From Isurus oxyrinchus (lineage: Eukaryota): a DNA stretch of 64,000 nt. The stretch covers positions 930,001 through 994,000 of the forward strand of contig JANJGN010000052.1 in the NCBI GenBank assembly GCA_026770705.1. Direction: 5' to 3'. The position numbers were made by a program, and so were the translations under genes. The number at the start of each line of letters is the position of its first letter. The stretch's first letter is position 1. Of this stretch, positions 10,972-57,439 are shown in pieces. The notes under the pieces are model-generated. The model was not told the origin of the DNA and searched no databases. It saw only the letters and a list, made by a program, of their open reading frames with translations.

Positions 10972-12634
10972 CTAGAGAACACACAGAAAGAAATCATCAC
11001 TGACTCTCCACTTTCAATCTCTCACTCTGGCTGAACAATCAAGCTTCATAACACTGCAACATTTGCTGTAATATTGACCCATCCACTGGGATTCAATGTG
11101 GAATGAATGTTTTCATTGTAAACACTCGAAGAGTGGACAATCGGAACTTTCCCCTTAGCGTGGAACATTGGTGAGAATGGATCATTGTGCTGTTGGACTC
11201 CCTGTCCAATGTTTCTCTCCATCGCTGTGTACAGGATTGTGCTGTAGAAAATTCTGGAAATGTTTAGTGCAGGGTGGAAATCCATCTCGGATGCGTGTGC
11301 GAATCGGGCAGGATCGAGATGGACTCCCCCACGGACTTACACACCCCGCTAAATAAACAGTTCCAATCTTTACCCAGAGAGAGGGGAGAATGTGGAACTC
11401 ACTCCCACTGGGAATGGTTGAGGTGAACAGTATCGATGTATTTAAGGGGCAAGAGGGTCGGTAACCAGAGGGGCACAGATTGACGAACCGGAGGGGGAGA
11501 TGAGGAGAATTTGTTTTGACAGAGCGAGTTGTTGTGATCTGGAAGGTGCTGCCTGAAAGGGTGGTGGAAGCAGATTCAATAGGAACTTTCAAAAGGGGAA
11601 TTGGATAAACACTTGAAGGAGGAAGATGGGGGCAAAGTGGAGTGGTGGTTAGTGGATCTGATTGGATAGAACATTGAAAGACCTGGCACAGGCACAATGG
11701 GCTGAATGGCCTCCTCCTGTGCTGTATCATTCTCCGCTTCCATGATCTCTCCCCCAGTCAGTAACCACTCCAGATCCCTCTTGAAGGTGACAGAGAAACA
11801 GCAACCACCACACCCACTGACAGCACATTCCCGAGGATCACTACTCTCTGGGAAAAGATGAACTCCCCAACATCCAGCCTATTCCTGCTTCCCGGAGAGT
11901 GTAAACACTTCAGGGAGGTGCTGAGGAAGTTCTCAATAAAATGAATTATCAAATCTACCATTTGAGAAATAATTGAATTCCGATGAACTCCCAGCTTGTG
12001 TAGCAAACTGGGAAGTAGATTTGCTTGAAAAGCTGGGAAACACAAGGATTAAGTGCTACAATGCCACCACTGGTGGGAGGCTGTAACTACAGTGTGACGT
12101 TTACATAGGCAGTCATCACTATAAACAGGGGCTTTGGACATAATGGGCACGGAAATAGTGAGAACAGGATGTAAGCTTTTCATCAGCAGGAATTCTCTTA
12201 CTAAACCTCTCCACCTCTCTCTTACTCTCAGATTCACAAAAAAATCACAGAATCAGATAAAGAGGAGTTGGGACTAGTTATTCGTCAAAGGGTTAGGTTT
12301 CAGGTAGCTCCTTAAAGGGAGAGAGAGAGTTGGAGAAGCAGAGAGTATCTATGAGTGCCTCTATGCATCTGAGTGTTTGTACGAGTAATTTCCATATTCT
12401 TCCATAAATATGAATGGGAACACAAATCCCAGAATTCAGCCCACGCTCCAGTGCAGTACTGAGGGAGGTCAGATAACCCATGAGGGAGTCTTGTGCTAGT
12501 GTGTTTGTTTGTGAGTGTGTCTTTGTGTGTGGTCATATATGTGTGTCTGCACGTGTCTATTTAGGTCTGTACGTTTGAGGGTGTTTGTGTAGTATTCGAA
12601 TCTGAGAGAGATGTTGAAGTCTGTGTACACTCAC

Positions 12635-12787
12635 ATTCCACAGTAATGGTTATGAACCCCTCCACTGCTCCATGTTCATTCTCTGCCACACACTGATAGT
12701 CTCCAGTGTCCCTGGATGTAACGTGAGGAATCAGCAACCACAGCTCATTGTTGGAACTTCTTCTGTTCATTTGGACATTCAGATGTC
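12635..12787 (-). pseudogene. Locus S2 5'-truncated C2-set exon
   Basis: MNRRSSNNELWLLIPHVTSRDTGDYQCVAENEHGAVEGFITITVE with gtgag donor; similarity to the 282-nt paralogous exons stops at ~12787 and no acceptor is evident. Confidence 0.88.
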
Positions 12788-14859: not shown

Positions 14860-15670
14860 ATCGTTCCGTTACTTACCCAGGACCTGTCCGACTGCTCGCC
14901 TGGGGAGGAACTGCCCACACGCTCTGCTTGGGCTGAATGACCTCTTCCTGTGCTGCTCCCTCTGTGTATTTAATGAGAAAGGGTTGATGTGTGTCTGTGA
15001 GTCAAAATGAGGAAGTTGGATCAAAGTGACAGACCAGCTCATGTTTTGAGATGTTGGTGAACTGTTAATCCTTTGTGTCCTGACCCTGTGTTGATATTTC
15101 TGCTCACAGGTGGACAGTCATTGACCAGGAGTTTCTCCTGTGGGTCAGTGGGTTTCACAGCCAAATTCAGGGGGTCAGAATGTTGTGGGATTCAAGACCC
15201 CATTCAGGGGACGTCTGCCCCACAGAGTAGACTGAAACTGCCCAGCGTCAGTCCTGAGGGAGTGCTGCACTGTCGGATGGTCATTACTGCACTATTGTAA
15301 GGTCAGTACTGAGGGAGATCTCCACTGTTTGAGGGTGAGTACTGAGGGAGTGCTGCACTGTCAGAGGGACATTAATCAGGGAGTGCTGCAATGTTGGAGG
15401 ATCAGTACTGAGGGAGTGCTGCACTGTTGAAGGGTCAGTATTAAGGTGCTGATTTACAAGACAGGACAATGGATTAGGAGCCCTCAGAACTCCCCCCGTG
15501 ATTTCCAATCATTCCGTTACTTACCCCGGACCTGTCCGACTGCTCGCCTGGGGAGGAACTGCCCACACGCTCTGCTTGGGCTGAATGACCTCTTCCTGTG
15601 CTGCTCCCTATTTGTGTTTAATTAAAAAGGGTGGATGTGTCACTGTGAGACAAAATGAGGAAGTGCTTGG
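14860..15670 (-). promoter_or_regulatory. Two tandem copies of the promoter/exon-1 module upstream of S2
   Basis: Donors at 14876 and 15524; GAGGAAGT at 15009-15016 and 15657-15664. Confidence 0.55.
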
Positions 15671-17856: not shown

Positions 17857-18964
17857 GTGCTCTCTTGTTCCTGTGTAGCACGCTCAAGGGGGCCTCCTCC
17901 TGTTCCGATTCAATGGGCAGTCAAAGCATGTGCCTGATTTTGGACCGCGAACCCAAATCTGTCCTCAGGGCATTGATAGAGGAAATGACCAGTTACAGAT
18001 CAATGCAGGAGGATTATTTATTTTCCCAATCTTTGAATCAAGTATCTCATCAAACACAGAGCGGAAACAGGATCGAGGATGTTGGTCTCTGTAATCTGTA
18101 ACACATCGCAAAGTCCACCCATCCACTCAGCCTTCAGGATGGATGCTAATTGTACTCTCCAAGTGTGAAGGACTAAAATGGTGGTTTATTGCAGCTCTAT
18201 CTCATTCTGTTATCAAAGCTGTCTCATCCATCCAATGACATATTGAAGAAGATAAACCTGCAACCAATTTTTCACATCATAGTTTCCAATGTTCATTGGC
18301 AACATCAATGTAAACATGTCATGCTGAAATGATGTCCTCCCACCAGTGGTGGCACTGTAGCACATCTGTTATCCTCTAAGCTGCAGAGAATTTCTCAACT
18401 CTCCAATCAAATTGTTTCCCTGTTTCCCAGATTCTTGTTTGTTTCGCTGTTTAACGATGAAGTGTAAAATCCAAATATATATCTGAAAATACATTTGACT
18501 ACAAAATGCTGAGTAAATTTTGCCAATCTCCTCTGCTCCAATTATCCACCGATCCTGCATTTCCTGAAGTCTACACTGGCTGATGAATATTCTGTAAACA
18601 CTGACAGACAGAAAGGTGAATAACAGAATGAAAATTAACTCATAATCACGGACACGGGATTGAATTTGTCCGTTCTGTCCTGGTACATCATCGAACGATA
18701 TCTAAAGATATTTACAATCAGAATGGAGAGAAGGATGTTTCCAACAGTGAGGGACAATTCTGAAGGAGGATGTTCGAATTGAAACCCACAGACAATCATC
18801 CTGGATAGATCATTCCGAAGAAATTCCATCAGATTGTAACAAGAGGTTTAAATCTATTTCCTGGGAGTGAGTTCCTGTGGATATTAGGAAGGTAAATTGG
18901 AGTTTTGAATGATTCTCCCGTTCTGTATTCTCCCCACACTGTGTGTGTCTCATTCTTGCTCAGT

Positions 18965-19081
18965 TTATAAATTCCCATAAACAGAATCCTTGGCAAATTC
19001 ACAGTTTGCGTAAAGATCATCATCTGTATCAGGATTGACTCCGCGGTTAGATTTCATTTCCAGATCCTTCTCATCTTTCTT
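18965..19081 (-). CDS. Locus S3 last cytoplasmic exon (KKDEKDLEMKSNRGVNPDTDDDLYANCEFAKDSVYGNL*)
   Basis: Acceptor tttctattacag; phase 0, 39 codons incl. TAA; two Tyr motifs after acidic residues; minus-strand AATAAA at 18185-18190 and 18017-18022. Confidence 0.82.
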   Translation of the reverse strand, partial: KKDEKDLEMKSNRGVNPDTDDDLYANCEFAKDSVYGNL

Positions 19082-19134
19082 CTGTAATAGAAACAGAAAT
19101 GATCAGAGTGACAATCAGAGTGATCAGTGTTTAG

Positions 19135-20710
19135 TATTATTGATCCAAATCAAAAAATTCCATCCACAGTAGAGACATTAATTATTGATACTGAACGGGG
19201 TTTGATTATTGATCCTGAACGATGTTTGATTATTGATTCTGAACGGGGTTTGATTTTTAATTCTGAACGGGGTTTGATTATTGATTCTGAAAAGGGTTTG
19301 ATTATTTATTCTGAATGGGTTTTGATTATTGAATCTGAACGGAGTTTGATTATTGATCCTGAACGTAGTTTGATTATTGATACTGAACAGGGTTTGATTA
19401 TTGATTCTGAACGGGGTTTGATTATTGATACTGAATGGGGTTTGATTATTGATACTGAACGGGGTTAGATTATTGATACTGAACGGGGTTTGATTTTTAA
19501 TACTGAACGGGGTTAGATTATTGATACTGAACGGGGTTTGATTTTTAATTCTGAACGGGGTTTGATTATTGATTCTGAACGGGATTAGATTATTGATACT
19601 GAACAGGTTTGATTTTTAATTCTGAACAGGGTTTGATTATTGATACTGAATGGGGTTTGATTATTGATACTGAATGGGGTTTGATTATTGATTCTGAAAG
19701 GGTTTTGATTATTGAATCTGAACGGGGTTTGATTATTGATCCTGAACGAAGTTAGATTATTGATATTGAACGGGGTTTGATTATTGATATTGAACGGGGT
19801 TTGATTATTGATTCTGAACGGTGTTTGATTATTGATCCTGAACGGAGTTTGATTATTGATACTGAATGGGGTTTGATTATTGATTCTGAACAGTGTTTGA
19901 TTATTGATTCTGAACGGGGTTTGATTATTGATACTGAACGGTGTTTGATTCTTGATTCTGAACTGGGTTTTGATTATTGATTCTGAAAGGGGTTTGATTA
20001 TTGATTCTGAATGGGGTTTGATTATTGATACTAAACGGGGTTGGATTATTGATACTGAACGGGGTTTGATTATGTATACTGAACGGGGTTTGATTATTGA
20101 TTCTGAACGCGGTTTGATTATTGATACTGAGCGGGGTTTGATTATTAATTCTGAACGGGGTTTGTTTATTGATACTGAACGGGGATTGATTATTGATTCT
20201 GAAAGGGGTTTGATTATTGATACTAAACGGGGTTGGTTTATTGATACTGAACGGGGTTTGATTATGTATACTGAACGGGGATTGATTATTGATTCTGTAC
20301 GCGGTTTGATTATTGATTCTGAACGGGGTTTGATTATTAATTCTGAACTGGGTTTGTTTATTGATACTGAACGGGGATTGATTATTGATTCTGAATGGGG
20401 TTTGATTATTAATTCTGAACAGGGTTTGATTATTGATACTGAACGTGGTTTGTTTATTGATACTGAACGGGGATTGATTATTTATTCTGAAAGGGGTTTG
20501 ATTATTAATTCTGAACGGGGTTTGATTATTGATACTGATCGGGGTTTGATTATTGATTCTGAACGGGTTTTATTATTGTTACTGAACGGAGTTTGGTTAT
20601 TGATACTGAACGGGGTTTGATTATTGATTCTGAACGGGGTGTGTTATTGATTCTGAACGGGGTTTGATTATTGATTCTGAACGGGGTTTGATTATTGATT
20701 CTGAACGGTG
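19135..20710. repeat. 24-bp minisatellite (ttgattattgattctgaacggggt)
   Basis: ~1.6 kb of tandem units filling the last S3 intron. Confidence 0.95.
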
Positions 20711-20841
20711 TTGGGTGTGAGTTTGGTTGGGTTTGGGAGTGACTGTATAAAACATTGCAGATACAGGAGTGGAGCAGCCATATCAATAACCAGGCTACTG
20801 GAGCAGCTGAGAGGCTGGGGATCCTGTGGTGTGTGACTCAC

Positions 20842-20947
20842 CTGATTCCTCAAAGCCCAACCACGCTCACAGTTTTCATAAACAGGACCTCGATATTCAT
20901 CAACACGGTGGTTCGATTTGATTCCTGCTTTCCCCTCACCTCTCTTC
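20842..20947 (-). CDS. Locus S3 first cytoplasmic exon (KRGEGKAGIKSNHRVDEYRGPVYENCERGWALRNQ); acceptor reads CG, not AG
   Basis: 106 nt, phase 2 to 0, exactly bridging the TM exon and last exon; donor CAG|gtgagt; polypyrimidine tract present but ends tttcg. Confidence 0.7.
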
Positions 20948-21292
20948 CGAAATAGAGATGGAAATGGACAGAATGACAATCAACATGATGTGTATTCGGT
21001 GTTGGGTTTGATTATTGGGGAGAGAGTTCCAGATTTCCACTCCCCTTTGTGTGAAGAAGTGCTTCCTGACATCACCCCTGAACGGCCTGGCTCCAATCTA
21101 AAGTTCCAGCCCCCTTGTTCTGGACTCCACCCGACCCCCACCACCCACCCCCACCCGAGGGAATAGCTTCTCTCTATCGACCCTATCGAGTGTTTAATCA
21201 GTTTGAACCCCTCAATTAGATCCCTCCTAAATCTTCTAGACCCGAGTGAATATAATCGTAGACTGTGTGTAACCTGTCTGCATAATTTAACC

Positions 21293-21700
21293 AGAAAGAT
21301 GTTCTGTACAACAGACTTGAGCCTCACACCCAGATCTCAATAATCAGTAGAAATCTTTCAAAGGCATCAATCATTGGAATCTGTCTTTATAAAGTCACAA
21401 CATCAACAAAGGACGGTGTTGGTGGTGGAAGTGAATTCCAATCGTTCCGTTACTTACCCAGTACCTGTCCGACTGCTCGCCTGGGGAGGAACTGCCCACA
21501 CGCTCTGCTTGGGCTGAATGACCTCTTCTTGTGCTGCTCCCTCTGTGTATTTAATGAGAAAGGGTTGATGTCTCTCTGTGAGTCAAATCAGGAATTGGGG
21601 AACAATTGTGAAAACCCTTTCATTGAAACGTAGGGCCTTAGTGTTGTGTTGTTAACAAACTGTTAACCCTTTGTGTCCTGACTCTGTGACGTGATTCCTG
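21293..21700 (-). promoter_or_regulatory. Orphan copy of the S1/S2 promoter/exon-1 module inside an S3 intron
   Basis: Near-identical to 14712-15090; donor at 21457; PU.1 core altered to CAGGAATT. Confidence 0.65.
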
Positions 21701-22262
21701 TGTAAAGCTGAGCAGTCGGTGAGCGAGTTTCAATTCACTGCTCACTCCAGGTGTTGAGGTGGATCTTCTGAAGGAGCAGATGTTGCTCAGCGCTCCTTAA
21801 AAATGTGAGAGACTGAACAACGTGTAAGAGGACGAGAGAAAGAATGAGAAGGAGAGCATTAGTGGAGATAAGAGAGAGTGAATGAGAGAGAGAGAGAATG
21901 AGAGAGAAAATGAGAAGGCGTGCATTAGTGGAGGTAAGAGAGAGAGTGAATGAAACATGGAAAAAGGAAAGAGATTGCATTCACTAACAAAAGAAAGGTT
22001 TTCATTTATATCGCACCTTTCACAAACTCAGGAGGTCACAAGGTATCTTATGGTCCGGGTCAACCCTGCCAGTTACAGGACTGAGTTGTGAAACAGTGAG
22101 TGTTGGATGAGATGTTAAACGGTAGGTGAACATCAAAACTCTTCAGGGGCTGTGAAGGGTTTTGGATTGTAAAAGTTGCTATAGAAATGCAAGTTCTTTC
22201 TATAAGGAGAGAAGGTTGAAGAAAACATGTTCAAAAACAACCAATTAAACCTTCACACTTAC

Positions 22263-22359
22263 TTTCTCACACACTTGAAGATGAAGAATCCACTCAGTCC
22301 AACACTCAAACAGATTCCAGCTCCAAGCAATCCTGCTTTCCATTCATTGGAATCTCGCC
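22263..22359 (-). CDS. Locus S3 transmembrane exon (RRDSNEWKAGLLGAGICLSVGLSGFFIFKCVRK)
   Basis: ttacag/gtaag; 97 nt, phase 1 to 2; paralogous to 52623-52719. Confidence 0.88.
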
Positions 22360-22579
22360 CTGTAAAATCAGCCAATGAATGACTCCGGTACAGTTTGAGA
22401 ATGGTTCCCTATGTACATGTAGTAATTCTGAACTTGTGAAGTGATATTGTCTATGCATGAAAGGTCTATACAAATAACATTTATCTATGTAATATTTATT
22501 GATAATATCCATGTACATGCAGGTTTCTATAAGGAGGATTCACATATAACAGGGGTGCCAAGCTGCTGAGGTGACACAC

Positions 22580-23590
22580 AGGACTACATACACACCAAAC
22601 AGCGGAAACAACATGCTACAGACAGAGCAAAGCGATCCCACAACCAACGGGTCAGATCTAAGCTCTGCAGTGCTGCCACATCCAGTCATGAATGGTGATG
22701 GACAATTAAAGATCTAACAGGAGGAGGATGTTCCACAAATATCCCCATCCTTAATGATGGGGGAGCTCAGCACATCAGTGCAAACGACAAGGCTGAAGCA
22801 TTGGCAACCATGTTCAGCCAGAAGTGCTGAGTGGATGCTCCATCTCGGCCTCCTCCAGAGGGTCCCAGCATCACAGATGTCAGCTTTCAGACAATTCGAT
22901 TGACTCCACGTGACATCAGGAATCAGCTGATGATACTGGATACAGCAAAGGCTTTTGGCCCTGGCAACAACCCGGCAACAGGAAATAATGTGGTTACAAG
23001 AACGGGTAAGAGGCTGGGAACTCTGCGGTGAGTAACTCACCTCCTGACTCTCCAAAGCCTGTCCACCATCGACAAGGCACAAGTCAGGATTGTGATGGAA
23101 TAATCTCCACTTGGCTGGATGAGTGCAGCTCCAACAACACTCAAGAAGCTCGACACCATCCAGGAGCAGCTTGTTTGATCGACAGCCCATCCACCAGCAT
23201 AAACATTCATACCCTCCACCACTGGCACACAATGGCAGCAGTGTATGCACCATCTACAAGATGCACTGCAGCAACTCACCAAAGCTTCTTCGACTGCACC
23301 TTCCAAACCCTTAACCTCTTCCACCAAGACAGTTCCAAGTCAGTGAGGTGTGTGACTTGGAAATCAACATGAGGTGGTGGTCTGCCCTGGGACTTGGAAC
23401 TATATCGGCCGTTCCTTCACCGTCGTTGGGTCAAAATCCTGGAACTCCCTCCCTAACAGCACTGTTGGTGTGCCTACACCACATGGACTGCAGTGGTTAA
23501 AGAAGGCAGCTCACCACCACCTTCTCAAGGGGCAGTTACAGATGGGCAATAATTTCTGGCCTTGTCAACAATGCCCACATCCCATGAGCT
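22580..23590 (+). mobile_element. Degenerate non-LTR LINE fragments (CR1/L2 group)
   Basis: Same family as 44800-45850 (RT motifs), 49120-49570 and 52030-52500; shared 3' end aaggcagctcaccaccaccttctcaaggg. Confidence 0.8.
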
Positions 23591-23625
23591 AATAACAAGA
23601 GAATGTAGAATTCTGTGTAACTCAC

Positions 23626-23907
23626 GTTCCACAGTGATGGTTATGAATCCCTCCACTGCTCCATGTTCATTCTCTGCCACACACTGATAGTCTCCAGTGT
23701 CCCTGGATGTAACGTGAGGAATCACCAACCACAGCTCATTGTTGGAACTTGTTCTGTTCATTGGGACATTAAGATGTCGCCACGTCAGGTTAGAAGCTGG
23801 GAAGCTCTCGACAGAGCAGATTATCACTGTAGAATTCCCCTCAATTATATTGATCGATGAAGCGTTAATCATATCAAGAGAAGTAATTGAGAGGTTCTGT
23901 GGAGCAT
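23626..23907 (-). CDS. Locus S3 C2-set exon (domain 5)
   Basis: ttttag/gtgag; 282 nt, phase 1-1; APQNLSI...IICSVESFPASNLTW...DTGDYQCVAENEHG. Confidence 0.9.
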
Positions 23908-24386
23908 CTAAAAACATATAAAGATTTTAGAGTGAGCAAGCACAATGCACATCAAGACTCCATGTATCATCTCTCCGTATCTGATGTCTGAATACAATTC
24001 CAGGCACCTTCCTCAGCATAAGTTCCTCTGTCACATTTATAATGGACACTGCCTATGTAAACTGTCACACTGCAGTTGCATTCCCCCACCAGTTGAGGTG
24101 CTATCAATCTAGAATGAAAGAAACTTTCATTCACATCCTCAGGATTTCGCCAAGCCTTTACAGGCAATGAATTGTATTTGATTGATGGAGCACTGAGGGG
24201 TAAATCTACAATTCACTGTTCAGGAGTTTGGTCATCCAATTCAGGGTCTTGTTGATCTGGAGTTTACCTTCGTTCCATCCAGAATTGGAGCTGACACCAA
24301 GACTCCAGTGCAGTGAGTGCGTGTGGGAGTGCATTTATGTATATGTGTTCAAATCTGAGAGAGTTGTTGAAGTCTGTGTAACTCAC

Positions 24387-24668
24387 GTTCCACAGTGATG
24401 GTTATGAACCCCTCCACTGCTCCATGTTCATTCTCTGCCACACACTGATAGTCTCCAGTGTCCCTGGATGTAACGTGAGGAATCACCAACCACAGCTCAT
24501 TGTTGGAACTTGTTCTGTTCATTGGGACATTAAGATGTCGCCACGTCAGGTTAGAAGTTGGGAAGCTCTCGACTGAGCAGATTATCACTGCAGAATACCC
24601 CTCAATTATATTGATCGATGAAACGTTAATCATATCAAGAGAATTAATTGAGAGATTCTGTGGTGTGT
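24387..24668 (-). CDS. Locus S3 C2-set exon (domain 4), tandem duplicate of domain 5
   Basis: tttcag/gtgag; 282 nt, phase 1-1, open. Confidence 0.9.
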
Positions 24669-24796
24669 CTGAAAACAAATAAAGATCAGTTACTTACATT
24701 GTCTGTGAAGCACTTTGAGAGGCCCTGAGAATGTGAAAGGTCTGATATCAATGTAGGTTCCTTCACCACAAAGCACTTAATTCAGGCAGTCACTAC

Positions 24797-28159: not shown

Positions 28160-28760
28160 GTCCCGCCCCTCAGGGAGGGTATATTGCCCTCCGAGGGGCT
28201 GCAGCCCAGAGTCACCAGAACGATCCCGGGGCTGAAAGGGTTAAATTCTGAGGACAGGTTGCACAGACCAGGCTTGTGTTCCCTCGAGTCTTGAAGATTA
28301 AGGGGTGATCTAATCGAGGGGTTTAAGATGATTAAAGGATTTGATGGGGTCGATAGAGAGAAACTATTTCCCCTGGTGGTGGGGGTGAGGTGAGGGGGTG
28401 GGGGTGAGGGTGGGGGTGGGGGTGGGGGTGGGGGTGGGGGTGAGGGTGGGGGTGGGGGGGTGGGGGTGGGGGTGAGGTGAGGGGGGGTCCAGAACAAGGG
28501 GGCAGAATCTTAAAATTGGAGCCAGGCCGTTCAGGGGGTGATGTCAGGAAGCAATTCTTCACACAAAGGGGGGGTGGAAATCTGGAACTCTCTCCCCCAG
28601 AAAAAGCTGTCGAGGCTGGGAGGGGTCAATTGTAAATTTCAAAACTGACATTGGGAGATTTCTGTTGGGTCGGGGGGTGTTTAAGGTTTAAGGAACCGAG
28701 CTGGGTGGATGGGGTTAATATACAGAACAGCCGTGATCTGATTGAATGGGGGAACAGGCT
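28160..28760 (+). mobile_element. CR1 3' fragment containing a (GGGGGT)n tract at ~28376-28490
   Basis: CR1 3' motifs; related copies at 21015-21290 and 42720-43750 on the minus strand. Confidence 0.8.
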
Positions 28761-29352: not shown

Positions 29353-29610
29353 ATTCAGTGGGAATTCTAATGGGCAGAGACTGGGAACTGCCCAGGATAC
29401 TTGTTGCTTCACAGTAGTAGGAGATTTCCTCATCGAATCCATAAGGAACTGTAATAGTTTGACCAGCGAGCGCGAGATTCGTCATCTTTCCTTGGGAGAT
29501 CTTAAACCAGGTGAAATTGTGGACTGCTGGATTCCCGTCACTGGAACAACTTAGAGAAATCACCTTTCCTTTTTCCAGTGTCAGCCTGACAGACGTGTTG
29601 TGAGGAGAAT
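29353..29610 (-). CDS. Locus S3 C2-set exon (domain 3), CD22/sialoadhesin-like
   Basis: 258 nt, phase 1-1; YSPHNTSV...LSCSSDGNPAVHNFTWFK...YYCEATSILGSSQS; acceptor AAG, donor gtgag. Confidence 0.88.
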
Positions 29611-30118: not shown

Positions 30119-30406
30119 ACTTTACACTCAGAGTAACGGAGCTGACCACTCGATGGCTGGTTTGAGGGTAGTCGCACGTACAGCGGAGAGTTCGTCCATG
30201 ATGCTTGAACGAAGGGTTAAAGGTCAGTAGAGCGGAAACCTCACCACCGTTCTCTGTAATGTTGCTGACCGATGAAGTCAGCAATTCACTCCAGGTTAGA
30301 TTGGGGTGGTTATCAGGGCAGGTGTAGAGGCATTTACAGATGATATGTGCAGGAGTCCCCTCCTGTAAATCCTTCAGGAGCACAATAACTGGCTTATCTG
30401 GAGCAT
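30119..30406 (-). CDS. Locus S3 C2-set exon (domain 2)
   Basis: ttacag/gtaag; 288 nt; DAPDKPVI...ICKCLYTCPDNHPNLTW...LTFNPSFKHHGRTLRC, Siglec domain-2 pattern with the inter-domain Cys. Confidence 0.9.
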
Positions 30407-32493: not shown

Positions 32494-32850
32494 CAAGAAC
32501 CTGGAGTTGGACTGGTTGTGTAAAAGTGTGATCTGTGTAGCCCTCCACATCCACATAAAAGTAATACACATCACTATCTTCAGCTCTGAGACTGTCAATC
32601 CTCACCGAACAATTCTTCCCTTCCAAGTCGCCGATTATTTTAGCACGTCCCACGAATGTGGCCATCGCATAGTTGGGATCTTTGGTGTATGTGATGGTAT
32701 ATTTCCATCTATACCAATATTTATACCAAGCTCCGTGCAGTGCTGTGTAAGAGTGGGAAGGAAAGTCAAAGCTACACGGAATAACCACACAAGAGCTGCT
32801 GATGGCCCTCCGAGACAGCGCCTTCATAGACCATCCCTCTGACGTCACTC
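32494..32850 (-). CDS. Locus S3 divergent Siglec-type V-set exon, Arg replaced by Tyr (YYFYVD)
   Basis: tttcag/gtaag; 357 nt, phase 1-1; CVVIPCSF...GDLEGKNCSVRI...EDSDVYYF. Confidence 0.92.
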
Positions 32851-33670: not shown

Positions 33671-33716
33671 CTTGCAGCAAGCTGATGAAGATCAGTATCA
33701 GACCGACCTCTCCCAT
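33671..33716 (-). CDS. Locus S3 leader exon coding part (MGEVGLILIFISLLQ-)
   Basis: ATG 33714-33716 in AAGATGG context; 46 nt, phase-1 donor AG|gtac; acceptor at 33731. Confidence 0.85.
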
Positions 33717-47090: not shown

Positions 47091-47339
47091 TCAGTTTTTC
47101 TGGAACCTGATCTGTGCGTATTCCGTGTCCTCGCTCCTGTGCACAGTCCTGTCACCGCCGGGCAGCTTTGAAAAGTTGATGTTGGCGTAGAGAAGCTTGG
47201 CGGGATTGTCGGGGTTCCCATGTCCAACATCGCCTCCCACTGGACCTTCAGAGAGATCCCGGGGAGCTGGGGTCTCCCCCTCACTAGTTGTGTCTCTGGT
47301 TGTGTTCCGGGGCTCAGTAATCAGCACGTTCTGTTTACC
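47091..47339 (-). CDS. Locus S4 distal last exon with ITIM (LLYANI) and ITSM (TEYAQI)
   Basis: ctgtag acceptor; phase 0; open to TGA at 47091-47093. Confidence 0.88.
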   Translation of the reverse strand, partial: GKQNVLITEPRNTTRDTTSEGETPAPRDLSEGPVGGDVGHGNPDNPAKLLYANINFSKLPGGDRTVHRSEDTEYAQIRFQKN

Positions 47340-50169: not shown

Positions 50170-50418
50170 TCAGTTATGCTCGAACCTGATCTGTGCGTAT
50201 TCCGTCTCCACTTCCCTGTGGACAGACCCATCACCACTGGACATCCTCAAGACTTGGGGATTGGCGTAGAGAAACTCTTCAGGTTTGTCAGGGTTCCCAT
50301 GTCCAACATCGCCTCCCACTGCATCTTCAGAGAGACCCCGGAGAGCTGGGGTCTCCCCCTCGCCAGTTGCGTCTCTCTTTGTGTTCTGGGGCTCAGTAAT
50401 CAGCACGTTCTGTTTACC
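50170..50418 (-). CDS. Locus S4 proximal last exon with disrupted ITIM (FLYANP) and ITSM (TEYAQI)
   Basis: ctgtag acceptor; phase 0; open to TGA at 50170-50172. Confidence 0.88.
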   Translation of the reverse strand, partial: GKQNVLITEPQNTKRDATGEGETPALRGLSEDAVGGDVGHGNPDKPEEFLYANPQVLRMSSGDGSVHREVETEYAQIRFEHN

Positions 50419-53660: not shown

Positions 53661-54005
53661 GTTTGGGAGGAGAACCTGAGTATTGCTGAGAAAGGACATT
53701 TTGTCAAAGCTTTCTGTCTTGCACCCAATGAAGCAGCTTATCTGGGGGAGAGGGTTCCAGATTTCCACTCCCCTTTGTGTGAAGAAGTGTTTCCTGACAT
53801 CACCCCCTGAACGGCCTGGCTCCAATTTGACCAAGTGTTGCCATTGTCACATGAGGTCAGGTGATTCAAAGCTTGGTCAAAGGGTTATGTTGTAAACAGC
53901 ATCTTAGAGGAGGTAGAGAGAGAGGTGGAGTGGTTGAGGGAGGGAATTCTCGAGTTTAGGGATCAATCCAGCTGAGTGGAGATCGATCCTGAGCGAGTCT
54001 CTCAC

Positions 54006-55960: not shown

Positions 55961-56291
55961 CAGATGCTCAGAATCAGCTGGATGGACAGAAAGACCAATG
56001 AGTGGCTTAGATCAAGAGGAGACGTTCAGCAATTAAAAGGGTTGTTCAGGACAGTTAGAGATAGAAAGGTCGTCAAGTACAGAGATTTGAAACGAAGACC
56101 TGACAGCCTTGTCCTCACAACCATTGAAGGAGAAACTGAGAGCAAAAACAGAAAGGGAGAGGAAAAATTGGGTGTGTGGATAACGTGGACTGAGCGAGGA
56201 TTGAAGAAAACTGGATTAAAAACAACACGATCCCAATGGCTCCACGGAGACCACAGAGACAACAAACAAACAAATGTATCTCCACACTCAC

Positions 56292-56573
56292 GTTCCACAG
56301 TGATGGTTATGAACCCCTCCACTGCTCCATGTTCATTCTCTGCCACACACTGATAGTCTCCAGTGTCCCTGGATGTAACGTGAGGAATCACCAACCACAG
56401 CTCATTGTTGGAACTTGTTCTGTTCATTGGGACATTAAGATGTCGCCACGTCAGGTTAGAAGCTGGGAAGCTCTCGACAGAGCAGATTATCACTGCAGAA
56501 TTCCCCTCAATTATATTGATCGATGAAGCGTTAATCATATCAAGAGAAGTAATTGAGAGATTCTGTGGTGCAT
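56292..56573 (-). CDS. Locus S4 C2-set exon (domain 3)
   Basis: ttttag/gtgag; 282 nt; near-identical to 23626-23907. Confidence 0.92.
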
Positions 56574-57439
56574 CTAAAAATATATAAAGATTTTAATGTG
56601 AGCAAACACAGTGCACAGCAAAACTTCCTGTATCTTCTCGCTGTAACTGATGCCTGTGTGCATTTCTAGGCACCCTCTCTCAAGATAAGTTCCTATGTCA
56701 CATTTACAATGGGCACTGCCTATGTAAACTGTCACACTGCAGGAGCATTCTCCCACCAGAGACCCTGCCCATCCAGATTTAAAGAAACAGCCTTTCACAT
56801 CCTCAGAATGTCCCCAAGGGCTTGACAGGCAATGAATTATATTTGATCGATGGAGCACTGAGGGGTAAATCTACAATTCTCTGTTCAGGAGGTTGCTCAT
56901 CCAATTCAGGGTCTTGTTGATCTGGAGTTTACCTTCCTTCAGCACAGAATCGGAGCTGACACCGAGACTCCAGTGCAGCACTGAGAGAGGAGAGGGAACT
57001 CACATGTGTGTATGTGTGTGTGTGTGTTTGTGTTTCTGTACAAGTGAGTGTGTTTGTGTGTGTGTATGTGTGTGTGTGTGTGTTTGTGTTTCTGCACAAG
57101 TGATTNNNNNNNNNNNNNNNNNNNNNNNNNNNNNNNNNNNNNNNNNNNNNNNNNNNNNNNNNNNNNNNNNNNNNNNNNNNNNNNNNNNNNNNNNNNNNNN
57201 NNNNNNNNNNNNNNNNNNNNNNNNNNNNNNNNNNNNNNNNNNNNNNNNNNNNNNNNNATGTGCGTGCTTACGTGTGTGTGTGTGTGTGTGCATGTGTGTG
57301 TGCGTGTGTGTGTTGTGTGTGTGCACGTGTGCGTGTGAATGTGCGTGCTTACATGTGTGTGTGTGTCTGTTGGTGTGTGTCTGGTCTGTGTAACCTGTAA
57401 ACCTAACCCTTCCACACTGATGGTCACAAACATCCCCCA

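What the first reader, a model, noticed from the sequence alone, without database searches (positions are those of the whole stretch)
18965..22359. Siglec-like receptor with a triple-YxN, adaptor-like cytoplasmic tail
The exon chain TM(phase 2)-20947..20842(phase 0)-19081..18965 gives ...GPVYENC...DDDLYANC...DSVYGNL*. Three pY-x-N motifs match the Grb2/Gads SH2 consensus used by LAT/NTAL, with acidic residues upstream of the last two. The terminal SVYGNL also fits the ITIM consensus. The tail is unrelated to the S4 ITIM/ITSM tail although the TM exons are paralogous, implying tail swapping at a phase-2 intron.
Basis: partly seen in the sequence, partly recalled or inferred. Interest (0 to 1): 0.8.

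Follow-up and report, generated by a model that had tools for sequence, protein, structure and literature searches.

The report
Shark Siglec tail with YxN tyrosines
This is the end of a shark immune-receptor gene of the Siglec family; its inner tail carries two or three tyrosine motifs of the kind that dock Grb2-type adaptor proteins, and the same tail type occurs at other places in this genome.

Summary
The three YxN motifs are real (VYENC 20880-20869, LYANC 19012-19001, VYGNL-stop 18979-18965) and lie at the 3' end of a minus-strand Siglec-family gene (about 33716 to 18100).

- The base before 20947 is CG, not AG.
- A fully canonical, in-frame chain is TM 22359-22263, C1 21542-21458, C2 20943-20842, C3 19081-18965.
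- Only the Ig-to-TM and TM-to-C1 joints were seen. C2 inclusion and the C3 joint were not.

What the exons are:
- C3 is covered by contigs with a sharp edge at its acceptor. It matches, end to end, the C-terminus of a catshark hypothetical protein (51% identity), which keeps both YxN, the Cys at +3 and the x7 spacing.
- C2 is a partial tandem duplicate of C3 that has lost the ancestral acceptor.
- C3 weakly resembles the neighbouring gene's ITIM exon, so "unrelated tail" is doubtful.

Most likely function: docking of Grb2-family adaptors. This is not tested.

The scan already found this tail type at other loci of this genome. I found no paper on it.

The parts
33671..33716 (-). Probable leader (signal peptide) exon, MGEVGLILIFISLLQ plus 1 nt, phase-1 donor AAG|GTACAA
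   Evidence: script scan for ATG + hydrophobic run + phase-1 GT donor. ORFs of neighbouring paralogues carry a similar ...LLSLLQG. Inferred; no RNA evidence.
32494..32850 (-). V-set exon (357 nt, phase 1-1); Siglec-type; Tyr in place of the sialic-acid-binding Arg
30119..30406 (-). C2-set Ig exon (288 nt, phase 1-1)
29353..29610 (-). Ig exon (258 nt, phase 1-1), AAG acceptor
24387..24668 (-). Ig exon 4 (282 nt, phase 1-1), 95% identical to the next Ig exon
23626..23907 (-). Ig exon 5 (282 nt, phase 1-1); its donor at 23626 is joined to the TM exon in contigs
   Evidence: Joint 22358/9 -> 23625/6 with CT..AC ends in X1 and X8.
22263..22359 (-). Transmembrane exon (97 nt, phase 1 in, phase 2 out); no charged residue in the membrane span
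   Evidence: Both of its joints are seen in X1 and X8. Paralogous exon at 52717-52625.
21458..21542 (-). 85 nt with donor TGG|GTAAGT (phase 2 in, 0 out), or 78 nt with the weaker donor CAG|GTACTG at 21465 (phase 2 in, 2 out)
   Evidence: Joint 21542 -> 22263 with CT..AC ends in X1 (1 contig, 28 nt on the shorter side) and X8 (1 contig, 35 nt). Frames and sites. The choice of donor is inferred.
20842..20943 (-). Tail exon C2 (RGEGKAGIKSNHRVDEYRGPVYENCERGWALRNQ). 102 nt, phase 0-0 with acceptor AAG at 20945-20944, or 100 nt starting at 20941. Partial duplicate of C3. Carries YxN motif 1
   Evidence: Its inclusion in mRNA was not observed.
18965..19081 (-). Last coding exon C3 (KKDEKDLEMKSNRGVNPDTDDDLYANCEFAKDSVYGNL, then stop). 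Carries YxN motifs 2 and 3
   Evidence: Contigs of 4 of 4 runs cover it, and depth stops at 19085. 51% identical over 37 residues, without gaps, to the C-terminus of catshark P0002.
18100..18964 (-). 3' UTR, at least 865 nt. AATAAA at 18190-18185 and at 18022-18017
   Evidence: Contigs of all four runs cover 18100-18964 and some run past 18100. AATAAA sites.
19181..20712 (.). 24-bp satellite, 63.9 copies, filling most of the C2-C3 intron

Best explanation
The region is the 3' end of an apparently intact, transcribed Siglec-family receptor gene of a shark. The gene has a leader, an Arg-less V-set domain, four further Ig exons and an uncharged TM.

Exon structure of the tail:
- After the TM exon the tail is encoded by three exons, not two: C1 (21542-21458), C2 (20943-20842) and C3 (19081-18965).
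- C3 is the conserved core. It ends the protein with D-D-L-Y-x-N-C-[DE]-F, four residues, then [VL]-Y-x-N-[LI] at the C-terminus.
- C2 arose by tandem duplication of the 5' half of a C3-type exon together with its acceptor flank. It adds a third Y-x-N-C.
- The ancestral CAG acceptor of C2 is now CGG, so C2 must use a weaker AAG three bases downstream.
- At 102 nt and phase 0-0, C2 can be included or skipped without breaking the frame.

Inferred mechanism:
- On receptor clustering, Src-family kinases phosphorylate the tyrosines.
- The pY-x-N sites then dock SH2 domains of Grb2-family adaptors (Grb2, GRAP, Gads), with a valency of two or three.
- Whether the outcome is stimulatory (as with LAT, CD6, DNAM-1) or inhibitory (as with the CD22 Y4-Grb2 and TIGIT-Grb2-SHIP1 routes) cannot be told from sequence.

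Shown:
- the exon borders of TM, C1 (5' side) and C3 (5' edge);
- coverage of C3 and the UTR by contigs;
- conservation of C3 in a catshark;
- the C2/C3 duplication.

Inferred:
- which C1 donor is used;
- C2 inclusion;
- phosphorylation and Grb2 binding.
For: Contig evidence:
- Joints 22359->23626 and 22263->21542 have GT..AG ends, in X1 and X8.
- 18100-19085 is covered in 4 of 4 runs, while the bins between 19085 and 20660 are at or near zero. That pattern points to RNA, not DNA.

Splice sites and phases:
- All proposed sites are canonical and the phases match.
- All 7 other donors of the gene are GT[AG]AGT, as is the 21458 donor.

Duplication of C2 and C3:
- At DNA level C2 and C3 align across the acceptor flank with score 50, against 17.3 +/- 2.0 (max 24) in 300 shuffles. 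C3's CAG lies opposite CGG in C2.
- At protein level, 7 of 2000 shuffles reach the C2 vs C3 score and 0 of 2000 reach the C2 vs P0002-tail score. Pairwise E-values are 0.007 and 2e-4.

Conservation:
- C3 is 19/37 identical to the C-terminus of P0002, with no gaps and ending at the same last residue, E 1e-13.
- P0002 is Scyliorhinus torazame GCB77003.1.
- P0002 was one of 2 hits at E<=0.001 among 1.84 billion representatives.

Other support:
- YxN enrichment: 45 of 20000 shuffles.
- Siglec V domain.
- pYxN as a Grb2/Gads site in CD22, Siglec-10/G, NTAL, LAT, CD6, CD226 and TIGIT (passages read).
Against: - No joint C1->C2, C2->C3 or C1->C3 is among the 15 of 81 joints shown.
- Two organism-B contigs stop fitting at 19085, four bases past the acceptor. 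Among the exon ends in this locus, only the C1 short donor (...GACAG) would give that overlap. Such a join shifts the frame to a short, tyrosine-free end.
- X7 shows zero depth on the TM and C1 bins although its depth on C3 is 175.
- All runs are contigs and "RNA" is the tool's guess.
- The C2 acceptor is weak: AAG after a purine-interrupted pyrimidine tract.
- Only one homologue of the tail was found, and it lacks a C2-like motif. It has YVEM upstream instead.
- No binding or phosphorylation data exist.
Confidence: 0.55

Rival explanations
1. The tail is a decayed or retuned inhibitory tail. It descends from the ITIM exon of the neighbouring Siglec genes and still works mainly through SHP-1/2, recruited to the terminal SVYGNL and perhaps to LYANC. 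On this reading Asn(+2) is an inherited feature of the local ITIMs and not a new Grb2 code.
For: - C3 aligns with the neighbour's ITIM exon (NPDTDDD-LYANCEFAK against NPDNPAKLLYANINFSK). 5 of 2000 shuffles reach the score, and 41 of 2000 for the second neighbour tail. Pairwise E is 0.002.
- The neighbours' ITIMs already carry Asn at +2: LLYANI and FLYANP.
- SVYGNL fits the ITIM pattern.
Against: - The +3 residue of the ITIM-homologous motif is Cys in C3, in C2 and in the catshark.
- The catshark terminal motif has Ala at -2.
- The terminal motif ends at +3, so it has none of the further residues that, from my recall, SHP SH2 domains also contact.
- The P0002 tail is not significantly similar to the neighbour tails: 181 and 105 of 2000 shuffles.
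- No ITSM is present.
Confidence: 0.15
2. The dominant mRNA skips C2 and uses the short C1 donor (21465). C3 is then read out of frame and the protein ends in a short basic, tyrosine-free tail. The YxN frame would be translated rarely, or only in some tissues.
For: - Organism-B contigs X7 record 18 and X8 record 29 end at 19085. The 4-nt overlap ACAG matches only the 21465 exon end.
- The C2 acceptor is weakened, CAG to CGG.
- An earlier follow-up of this scan reports such skipping at a paralogous locus (s1-863554). That is a lead only.
Against: - Frame 0 of C3 is conserved to its last residue in a catshark. That requires translation in that frame.
- The 21465 donor (GTACTG) is unlike the 7 other donors of the gene, whereas 21458 is GTAAGT. 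With donor 21458, skipping C2 stays in frame.
- No such joint is among those displayed.
Confidence: 0.15
3. The C-terminal Y-x-x-[LI] is chiefly a tyrosine-based sorting signal (YxxPhi, recognised by AP-2) that drives endocytosis of the receptor, as is described for other Siglecs. On this reading Asn(+2) is incidental.
For: - YGNL and the catshark's YANI both fit YxxPhi at the extreme C-terminus.
- From my recall, not from a call: CD22 and CD33-related Siglecs are endocytic receptors.
Against: - It does not explain Asn at +2 being kept in 2 of 2 aligned motifs between the two sharks and in the C2 copy.
- It does not explain the conserved Y-x-N-C, whose +3 residue is not a bulky hydrophobic.
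Confidence: 0.1
4. YxNC-x7-YxN[LI] is an ITAM-like module that recruits Syk-family kinases through their tandem SH2 domains. The receptor would then be self-sufficient for activation.
For: The spacing between the two C3 tyrosines (Y-x-x-C, seven residues, Y-x-x-L) lies within the ITAM range. It is the same in the catshark.
Against: - The first +3 residue is Cys, not Leu or Ile, in 3 of 3 copies seen: C3, C2 and P0002.
- An earlier follow-up at a paralogous locus reached the same negative view (s1-863554; a lead only).
Confidence: 0.05

Closest known systems
Scyliorhinus torazame hypothetical protein scyTo_0020535 (GCB77003.1, P0002)
   Same: It has a TM segment followed by a tail whose last 37 residues align without gaps with C3 (51% identity). 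Both YxN, the Cys at +3, the x7 spacing and the C-terminal end are the same.
   Different: - It is a 158-aa fragmentary gene model with no Ig domains.
- The exon before the C3-like part is unrelated to C1 and C2 and carries YVEM.
- It has no third YxNC.
CD22 (Siglec-2), tyrosine Y4 in YENV
   Same: It is a Siglec whose tail holds a pYxN site that binds Grb2 (passages of PMC6286995; abstract start of PMC5302901). Motif 1 here is also Y-E-N.
   Different: - In CD22 the Grb2 site sits among three ITIMs that recruit SHP-1. Here no canonical internal ITIM exists.
- The Pfam Ig_CD22 match is below its cut-off, 22.9 against 27 bits.
- The V domain is closer to MAG than to any other solved Siglec.
Siglec-10 / Siglec-G
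   Same: It is a CD33-related Siglec with a Grb2-binding site in its tail in addition to other tyrosine motifs (passage of PMC6286995).
   Different: [quoted passage not shown] The tail here is made only of YxN-type tyrosines plus two non-YxN tyrosines.
LAT and NTAL/LAB transmembrane adaptors
   Same: They carry several YxN sites that dock Grb2/Gads. NTAL has five potential YxN (passage of PMC2196071). LAT Y171 and Y191 are YXN sites for GADS (passage of PMC5440646).
   Different: They are adaptors with minimal ectodomains and a juxtamembrane CxxC palmitoylation site. The protein here is a five-Ig-domain receptor with a single Cys after the TM (FKCVRK). No sequence similarity was found.
CD6, and the ITT-like motifs of CD226 (DNAM-1) and TIGIT
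   Same: These are Ig- or SRCR-type receptors that signal through their own pYxN sites: CD6 Y629 with GADS/GRB2, CD226 Y319 with Grb2 depending on Asn +2, and TIGIT Y225 with Grb2.
   Different: They have one YxN each, in unrelated tails, and are not Siglecs.
Channel catfish IpLITR 1.1b
   Same: It is a fish immunoregulatory Ig receptor with a proposed direct Grb2 YxN site (Y463) in its tail (passages of PMC4810170).
   Different: It has one YxN together with ITIMs and an ITSM, and belongs to a different receptor family.

Membership tests
Siglec family | N-terminal V-set domain of the Siglec type | tested here: met
   the 17 best of 95 solved-structure matches are all Siglecs (MAG 6e-15, sialoadhesin 7e-12, Siglec-5 5.5e-11, then Siglec-7, CD33, Siglec-8, Siglec-10). 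Pfam V-set, 30.3 bits against a cut-off of 26.
Siglec family | Conserved Arg that binds the sialic acid carboxylate | tested here: not met
   alignment: MAG ...yyfrgdlggy lies opposite ...yyfyvdvegy in this gene, so there is a Tyr where MAG has the Arg. The protein may not bind sialic acid.
Siglec family | V domain followed by C2-type Ig domains, a single TM and a tyrosine-bearing tail | tested here: met
   four further phase 1-1 Ig exons, a TM exon and tail exons. The Ig5->TM->C1 joints are seen in contigs.
Grb2-SH2 docking sites (pY-x-N) | Tyr with Asn at +2 | tested here: met
   three of five tail tyrosines. 45 of 20000 shuffles reach three.
Grb2-SH2 docking sites (pY-x-N) | Asn(+2) kept in homologues | tested here: inconclusive
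   2 of 2 C3 motifs are kept in the single homologue found, catshark P0002. Motif 1 has no counterpart there.
Grb2-SH2 docking sites (pY-x-N) | Phosphorylation-dependent binding of Grb2/GRAP/Gads | not testable with these tools
   Needs phosphopeptide pull-downs or binding assays.
LAT/NTAL-type transmembrane adaptors | Very short ectodomain and a juxtamembrane CxxC palmitoylation motif | tested here: not met
   The ectodomain has five Ig exons. The juxtamembrane sequence is FKCVRK, with one Cys. The CxxC feature is as stated in PMC2196071. So it may work like an adaptor, but it is not a member.
ITIM | (I/V/L/S)-x-Y-x-x-(I/V/L) | tested here: inconclusive
   Only the terminal SVYGNL fits. Motifs 1 and 2 have Cys at +3. 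The catshark counterpart ALYANI has Ala at -2.
ITAM | Yxx(L/I)-x6-8-Yxx(L/I) | tested here: not met
   The spacing fits (x7), but the first +3 residue is Cys in C3, C2 and P0002.
CD22 (Siglec-2) orthologue | CD22-type first Ig domain and a tail with ITIMs around a YENV site | tested here: not met
   Pfam Ig_CD22 scores 22.9 bits, below its cut-off of 27. The best structural relatives are MAG and sialoadhesin. There are no internal ITIMs.

The most novel reading that the evidence does not exclude
The tail is a splice-programmable signalling module. C1 can be read through or spliced at two donors, and the duplicated exon C2 can be included or skipped. One Arg-less Siglec gene could then give:
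- a short tyrosine-free tail;
- a bivalent pYxN tail;
- a trivalent pYxN tail.

The trivalent form would act like a receptor-borne LAT, nucleating Grb2-SOS-type assemblies. This would be a third signalling class beside the ITIM-type and charged-TM-type Siglecs of the same shark cluster.
Probability: 0.15. Interest if true: 0.65.

Novelty: new variant of a known kind. Interest (0 to 1): 0.4.

Why it matters
Mammalian Siglecs signal through ITIM/ITIM-like tails or, through a charged TM, DAP12. A single Grb2 site is known as an add-on in CD22 and Siglec-10/G.

A cartilaginous-fish Siglec tail built only around conserved YxN tyrosines would be a third wiring option, found in one of the oldest jawed-vertebrate lineages. 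If the weak similarity to the ITIM exon holds, it would also show how an ITIM can be converted into a different SH2 code.

- The function is untested.
- The third motif rests on an unverified exon.
- The scan has already met the same tail type at several loci of this genome, and a catshark database entry carries it.

Tried and rejected
Searches that gave nothing or little:
It covers only proteins of 22-70 aa, so the blank says little.
- Profile word search with P0002 plus the C3 and C2 translations as separate rows (A3): 1 of 33 candidates passed, and that was P0002 itself. The search covers only 87-276 aa.
- HMMER search of 1.84 billion representatives with C3: 2 hits at E<=0.001. I rejected P0001: it is 310 aa, has five matched stretches in a Cys/Asp-rich internal repeat, and has no TM or C-terminal match.
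- tblastn of the tail exons and of P0002 against the window: there is no second C2 or C3. C1 has three more copies.

Alignments and readings I set aside:
- A first alignment that included the TM exon (A2) scattered the TM row and was dropped.
- The depth of about 7-14 in the bin 20661-20857 in all four runs could be the last 16 nt of C2. I do not count it as evidence, because contig depth cannot be placed within a bin.
TM->20941 would be in frame but was not seen.

Literature: searches found 35, 4, 6 and 14 papers holding the terms, of which 15, 4, 5 and 10 were listed. I saw listings only. None of the listed titles or abstract starts deals with shark Siglec tails. Supplements are closed, so tables of shark genome papers (for example PMC8455134, which holds 'Siglec' once and which I did not read) may list such genes.

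Not done:
- I did not search a joined spliced model in any tool.
- The third word search, both structure predictions and the Atlas search were left unused because they could not bear on the tail.


Full report
**What is in the sequence**

On the minus strand the TM exon runs 22359..22263. Its acceptor is TTTTACAG and its donor AAA|GTAAGT. It encodes ...RDSNEWKAGLLGAGICLSVGLSGFFIFKCVR and ends in phase 2.

The last exon runs 19081..18965. Its acceptor is TTACAG and it enters in phase 0. It encodes KKDEKDLEMKSNRGVNPDTDDDLYANCEFAKDSVYGNL followed by TAA.

The middle exon holds ...RVDEYRGPVYENCERGWALRNQ and ends at 20842 with CAG|GTGAGT.

The nearest AGs give exon starts at 20943 (after AAG) or 20941 (after GAG).

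**The gene**

Upstream on the same strand lie five phase 1-1 Ig exons with canonical sites:
- 32850-32494
- 30406-30119
- 29610-29353
- 24668-24387
- 23907-23626

A probable leader exon lies at 33716-33671 (inferred).

Pfam calls the first exon V-set, with a sub-threshold Ig_CD22 match, and the others Ig/I-set/C2. Against solved structures the V exon's 17 best of 95 matches are all Siglecs, led by MAG (6e-15) and sialoadhesin (7e-12). In the MAG alignment the sialic-acid-binding Arg is a Tyr here. So this is a Siglec-family receptor that fails one defining feature.

**RNA-type evidence**

The look-up of sequencing runs listed no run that is on record as RNA. All runs are Logan contigs, with 'RNA?' as a guess. 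I laid X1 and X5 (organism A) and X7 and X8 (organism B) on 18100-24000.

Two joints have GT..AG ends on the minus strand, each in one contig of X1 and one of X8:
- Ig5 donor 23626 to TM acceptor 22359;
- TM donor 22263 to 21542.

All four runs cover 18100-19085, and the bins from 19085 to 20660 are at or near zero. This fits an RNA source and a real exon edge at the C3 acceptor.

Only 15 of 81 joints and 32 of about 12,650 contig pieces were displayed. None of the displayed joints involves C2 or the C3 acceptor. So C1->C2, C2->C3 and C1->C3 remain unseen.

**A consistent exon model**

C1 starts at 21542, after ACACAG, and has two possible donors:

| C1 donor | Site | C1 length | Phase | Matching C2 start |
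|---|---|---|---|---|
| 21465 | CAG\|GTACTG | 78 nt | 2 in, 2 out | 20941 |
| 21458 | TGG\|GTAAGT | 85 nt | 2 in, 0 out | 20943 |

Both pairings keep the YxN frame. I prefer 21458 + 20943 for four reasons:
- All 7 other donors of the gene are GT[AG]AGT.
- A G at -3 of an acceptor (GAG) is disfavoured; this is recalled knowledge.
- C3-type exons are phase 0.
- A probably paralogous X8 contig (94% alike) stops exactly at 21458.

In this model C2 is a 102-nt, phase 0-0 exon, so skipping it leaves C3 in frame.

**Origin of C2**

C2 and C3 align at DNA level across about 40 nt of acceptor-side intron and the first 35 nt of exon. The score is 50, against 17.3 +/- 2.0 (maximum 24) in 300 shuffles.

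In that alignment C3's ...ATTACAG|AAG lies opposite C2's ...ATTTCGG|AAG.

At protein level, IKSNHRVDEYRG-PVYENCE matches MKSNRGVNPDTDDDLYANCE: 7 of 2000 shuffles reach the score, and pairwise E is 0.007. It matches the catshark tail better still: 0 of 2000 shuffles, E 2e-4.

Motif 1 is thus a duplicate of motif 2, not an independent invention.

**Conservation**

A HMMER search with the 38 residues of C3 against 1.84 billion representatives gave 2 hits at E<=0.001. One is a spurious repeat protein.

The other, P0002, is Scyliorhinus torazame GCB77003.1, a 158-aa hypothetical protein. Its last 37 residues align with C3 without gaps, 19/37 identical, pairwise E 1e-13. The two proteins end at the same residue...DDLYENCDFVEGALYANI against ...DDLYANCEFAKDSVYGNL.

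Both Asn(+2), the Cys(+3) and the seven-residue spacing are kept. This shows that C3 is translated in this frame in sharks.

The catshark exon before it is unrelated to C1 and C2 and carries YVEM.

I could not reach full-length orthologues:
- The word search is bound to 0.55-1.75 times the query length.
- The joined model was not to be searched.

**Relation to the neighbour's inhibitory tail**

The TM exon at 52717-52625 is paralogous (20 of 31 residues identical, 77% nt) and ends in the same AAA|GTAAGT, phase 2.

C1 has three further copies in the window, at 15608, 14960 and 8219, with 84-96% protein identity and shared flanks. None lies in the neighbour gene. C2 and C3 are unique in the window.

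C3 is not simply unrelated to the ITIM/ITSM exon at 47094-47327. NPDTDDD-LYANCEFAK aligns with NPDNPAKLLYANINFSK: 5 of 2000 shuffles reach the score, and 41 of 2000 for the second tail at 50173-50406. BLASTP gives E 0.002 for the first and no alignment for the second.

Against this reading, the catshark tail is not significantly similar to either neighbour tail: 181 and 105 of 2000 shuffles.

The neighbours' ITIMs already have Asn at +2.

**Function**

pY-x-N is the Grb2/Gads SH2 code. From the papers I saw passages only:
- CD22 Y4 in YENV binds Grb2, and Siglec-10/G has a Grb2 site (PMC6286995).
- NTAL has five potential YxN sites and a CxxC palmitoylation site (PMC2196071).
- LAT Y171 and Y191, and CD6 Y629, are YXN sites for GADS/GRB2 (PMC5440646).
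- CD226 Y319 binds Grb2 in a way that depends on Asn +2, and TIGIT Y225 binds Grb2 (PMC9263721).
- Catfish IpLITR 1.1b Y463 is a proposed YxN site (PMC4810170).

My best reading is a Siglec-family receptor that docks Grb2-family adaptors at two or three sites. The sign of the signal is unknown.

Three points speak against other readings:
- The terminal motif also fits ITIM and YxxPhi patterns, but its -2 residue is not kept in the catshark.
- The motif ends at +3, which suits Grb2 better than SHP SH2 domains. This is an inference from recalled SH2 binding modes.
- ITAM is not met, because the first +3 residue is Cys in 3 of 3 copies.

**What remains open**

Two organism-B contigs (X7 record 18, with 59 nt beyond; X8 record 29, with 451 nt beyond) stop fitting at 19085, four bases past the C3 acceptor. 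Among the exon ends here, only the short C1 end (...GACAG) gives a four-base overlap. That join would shift the frame to a short tyrosine-free end.

X7 has no depth on TM or C1. An X8 contig (21350-21487) crosses both C1 donors unspliced.

These points keep alive a reading in which splicing chooses between a short tail and the YxN tail.

**Earlier notes of this scan**

Earlier notes describe the same YxN tail type at other loci of this genome, together with ITIM-type and charged-TM-type copies. One follow-up reports exon skipping at a paralogous locus. I used these as leads only.

My paper searches (listings only) showed no paper on shark Siglec tails.

**Verdict**

This is a real coding tail and a new variant of a known kind. 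Interest is moderate.

Noticed in passing
window 19181-20712: A 24-bp satellite (consensus unit ATTATTGATTCTGAACGGGGTTTG, 63.9 copies, 86% matches) fills most of the intron between tail exons C2 and C3.
   Followed up: no
window 15608-15534, 14960-14886, 8219-8145 (minus strand): Three more copies of the C1 tail exon with shared flanks (86-93% nt). Two of them lie between this gene's 3' end and the next gene's V exon, with no TM exon nearby. They may be relics of a lost gene copy.
   Followed up: partly
window 32494-32850: In the alignment to MAG, the V domain has Tyr where MAG has its sialic-acid-binding Arg (YYFYVDVEGY against YYFRGDLGGY).
   Followed up: partly
window 23604-23925 vs 24365-24686, 56286-56656, 12605-12787: One Ig exon is kept at 94-95% nt identity in two tandem copies within this gene and in two neighbouring genes, although the surrounding sequence is not alike.
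   Followed up: no
window 47094-47327 and 50173-50406 (minus strand): The neighbouring gene's two tail exons carry ITIM-position motifs with Asn at +2 (LLYANI, FLYANP), followed by TEYAQI.
   Followed up: partly
window 18991 and 18998: Two differences in C3 are fixed in the organism-B contigs and present in one minor contig of X1: AAG>GAG (Lys to Glu) and GAA>GAT (Glu to Asp). The second matches the catshark residue. Neither touches a Tyr or an Asn(+2). 66 further differences across the stretch were not displayed.
   Followed up: partly
window 21350-21487: An X8 contig runs unspliced across both C1 donors. Read through, the frame continues for 20 more codons to a stop. This would give a short tail, or it may be pre-mRNA.
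   Followed up: no
window 21017-21292: An interspersed repeat, with copies at 28239-28597, 42914-43055/43495-43638 and 53745-53826, sits between C1 and C2. The homology of the C1 block to its other copies stops exactly there.
   Followed up: no
P0002 residues 106-111: The catshark homologue has a YVEM (YxxM-type) tyrosine upstream of the C3-like part. This gene has nothing alike there.
   Followed up: no
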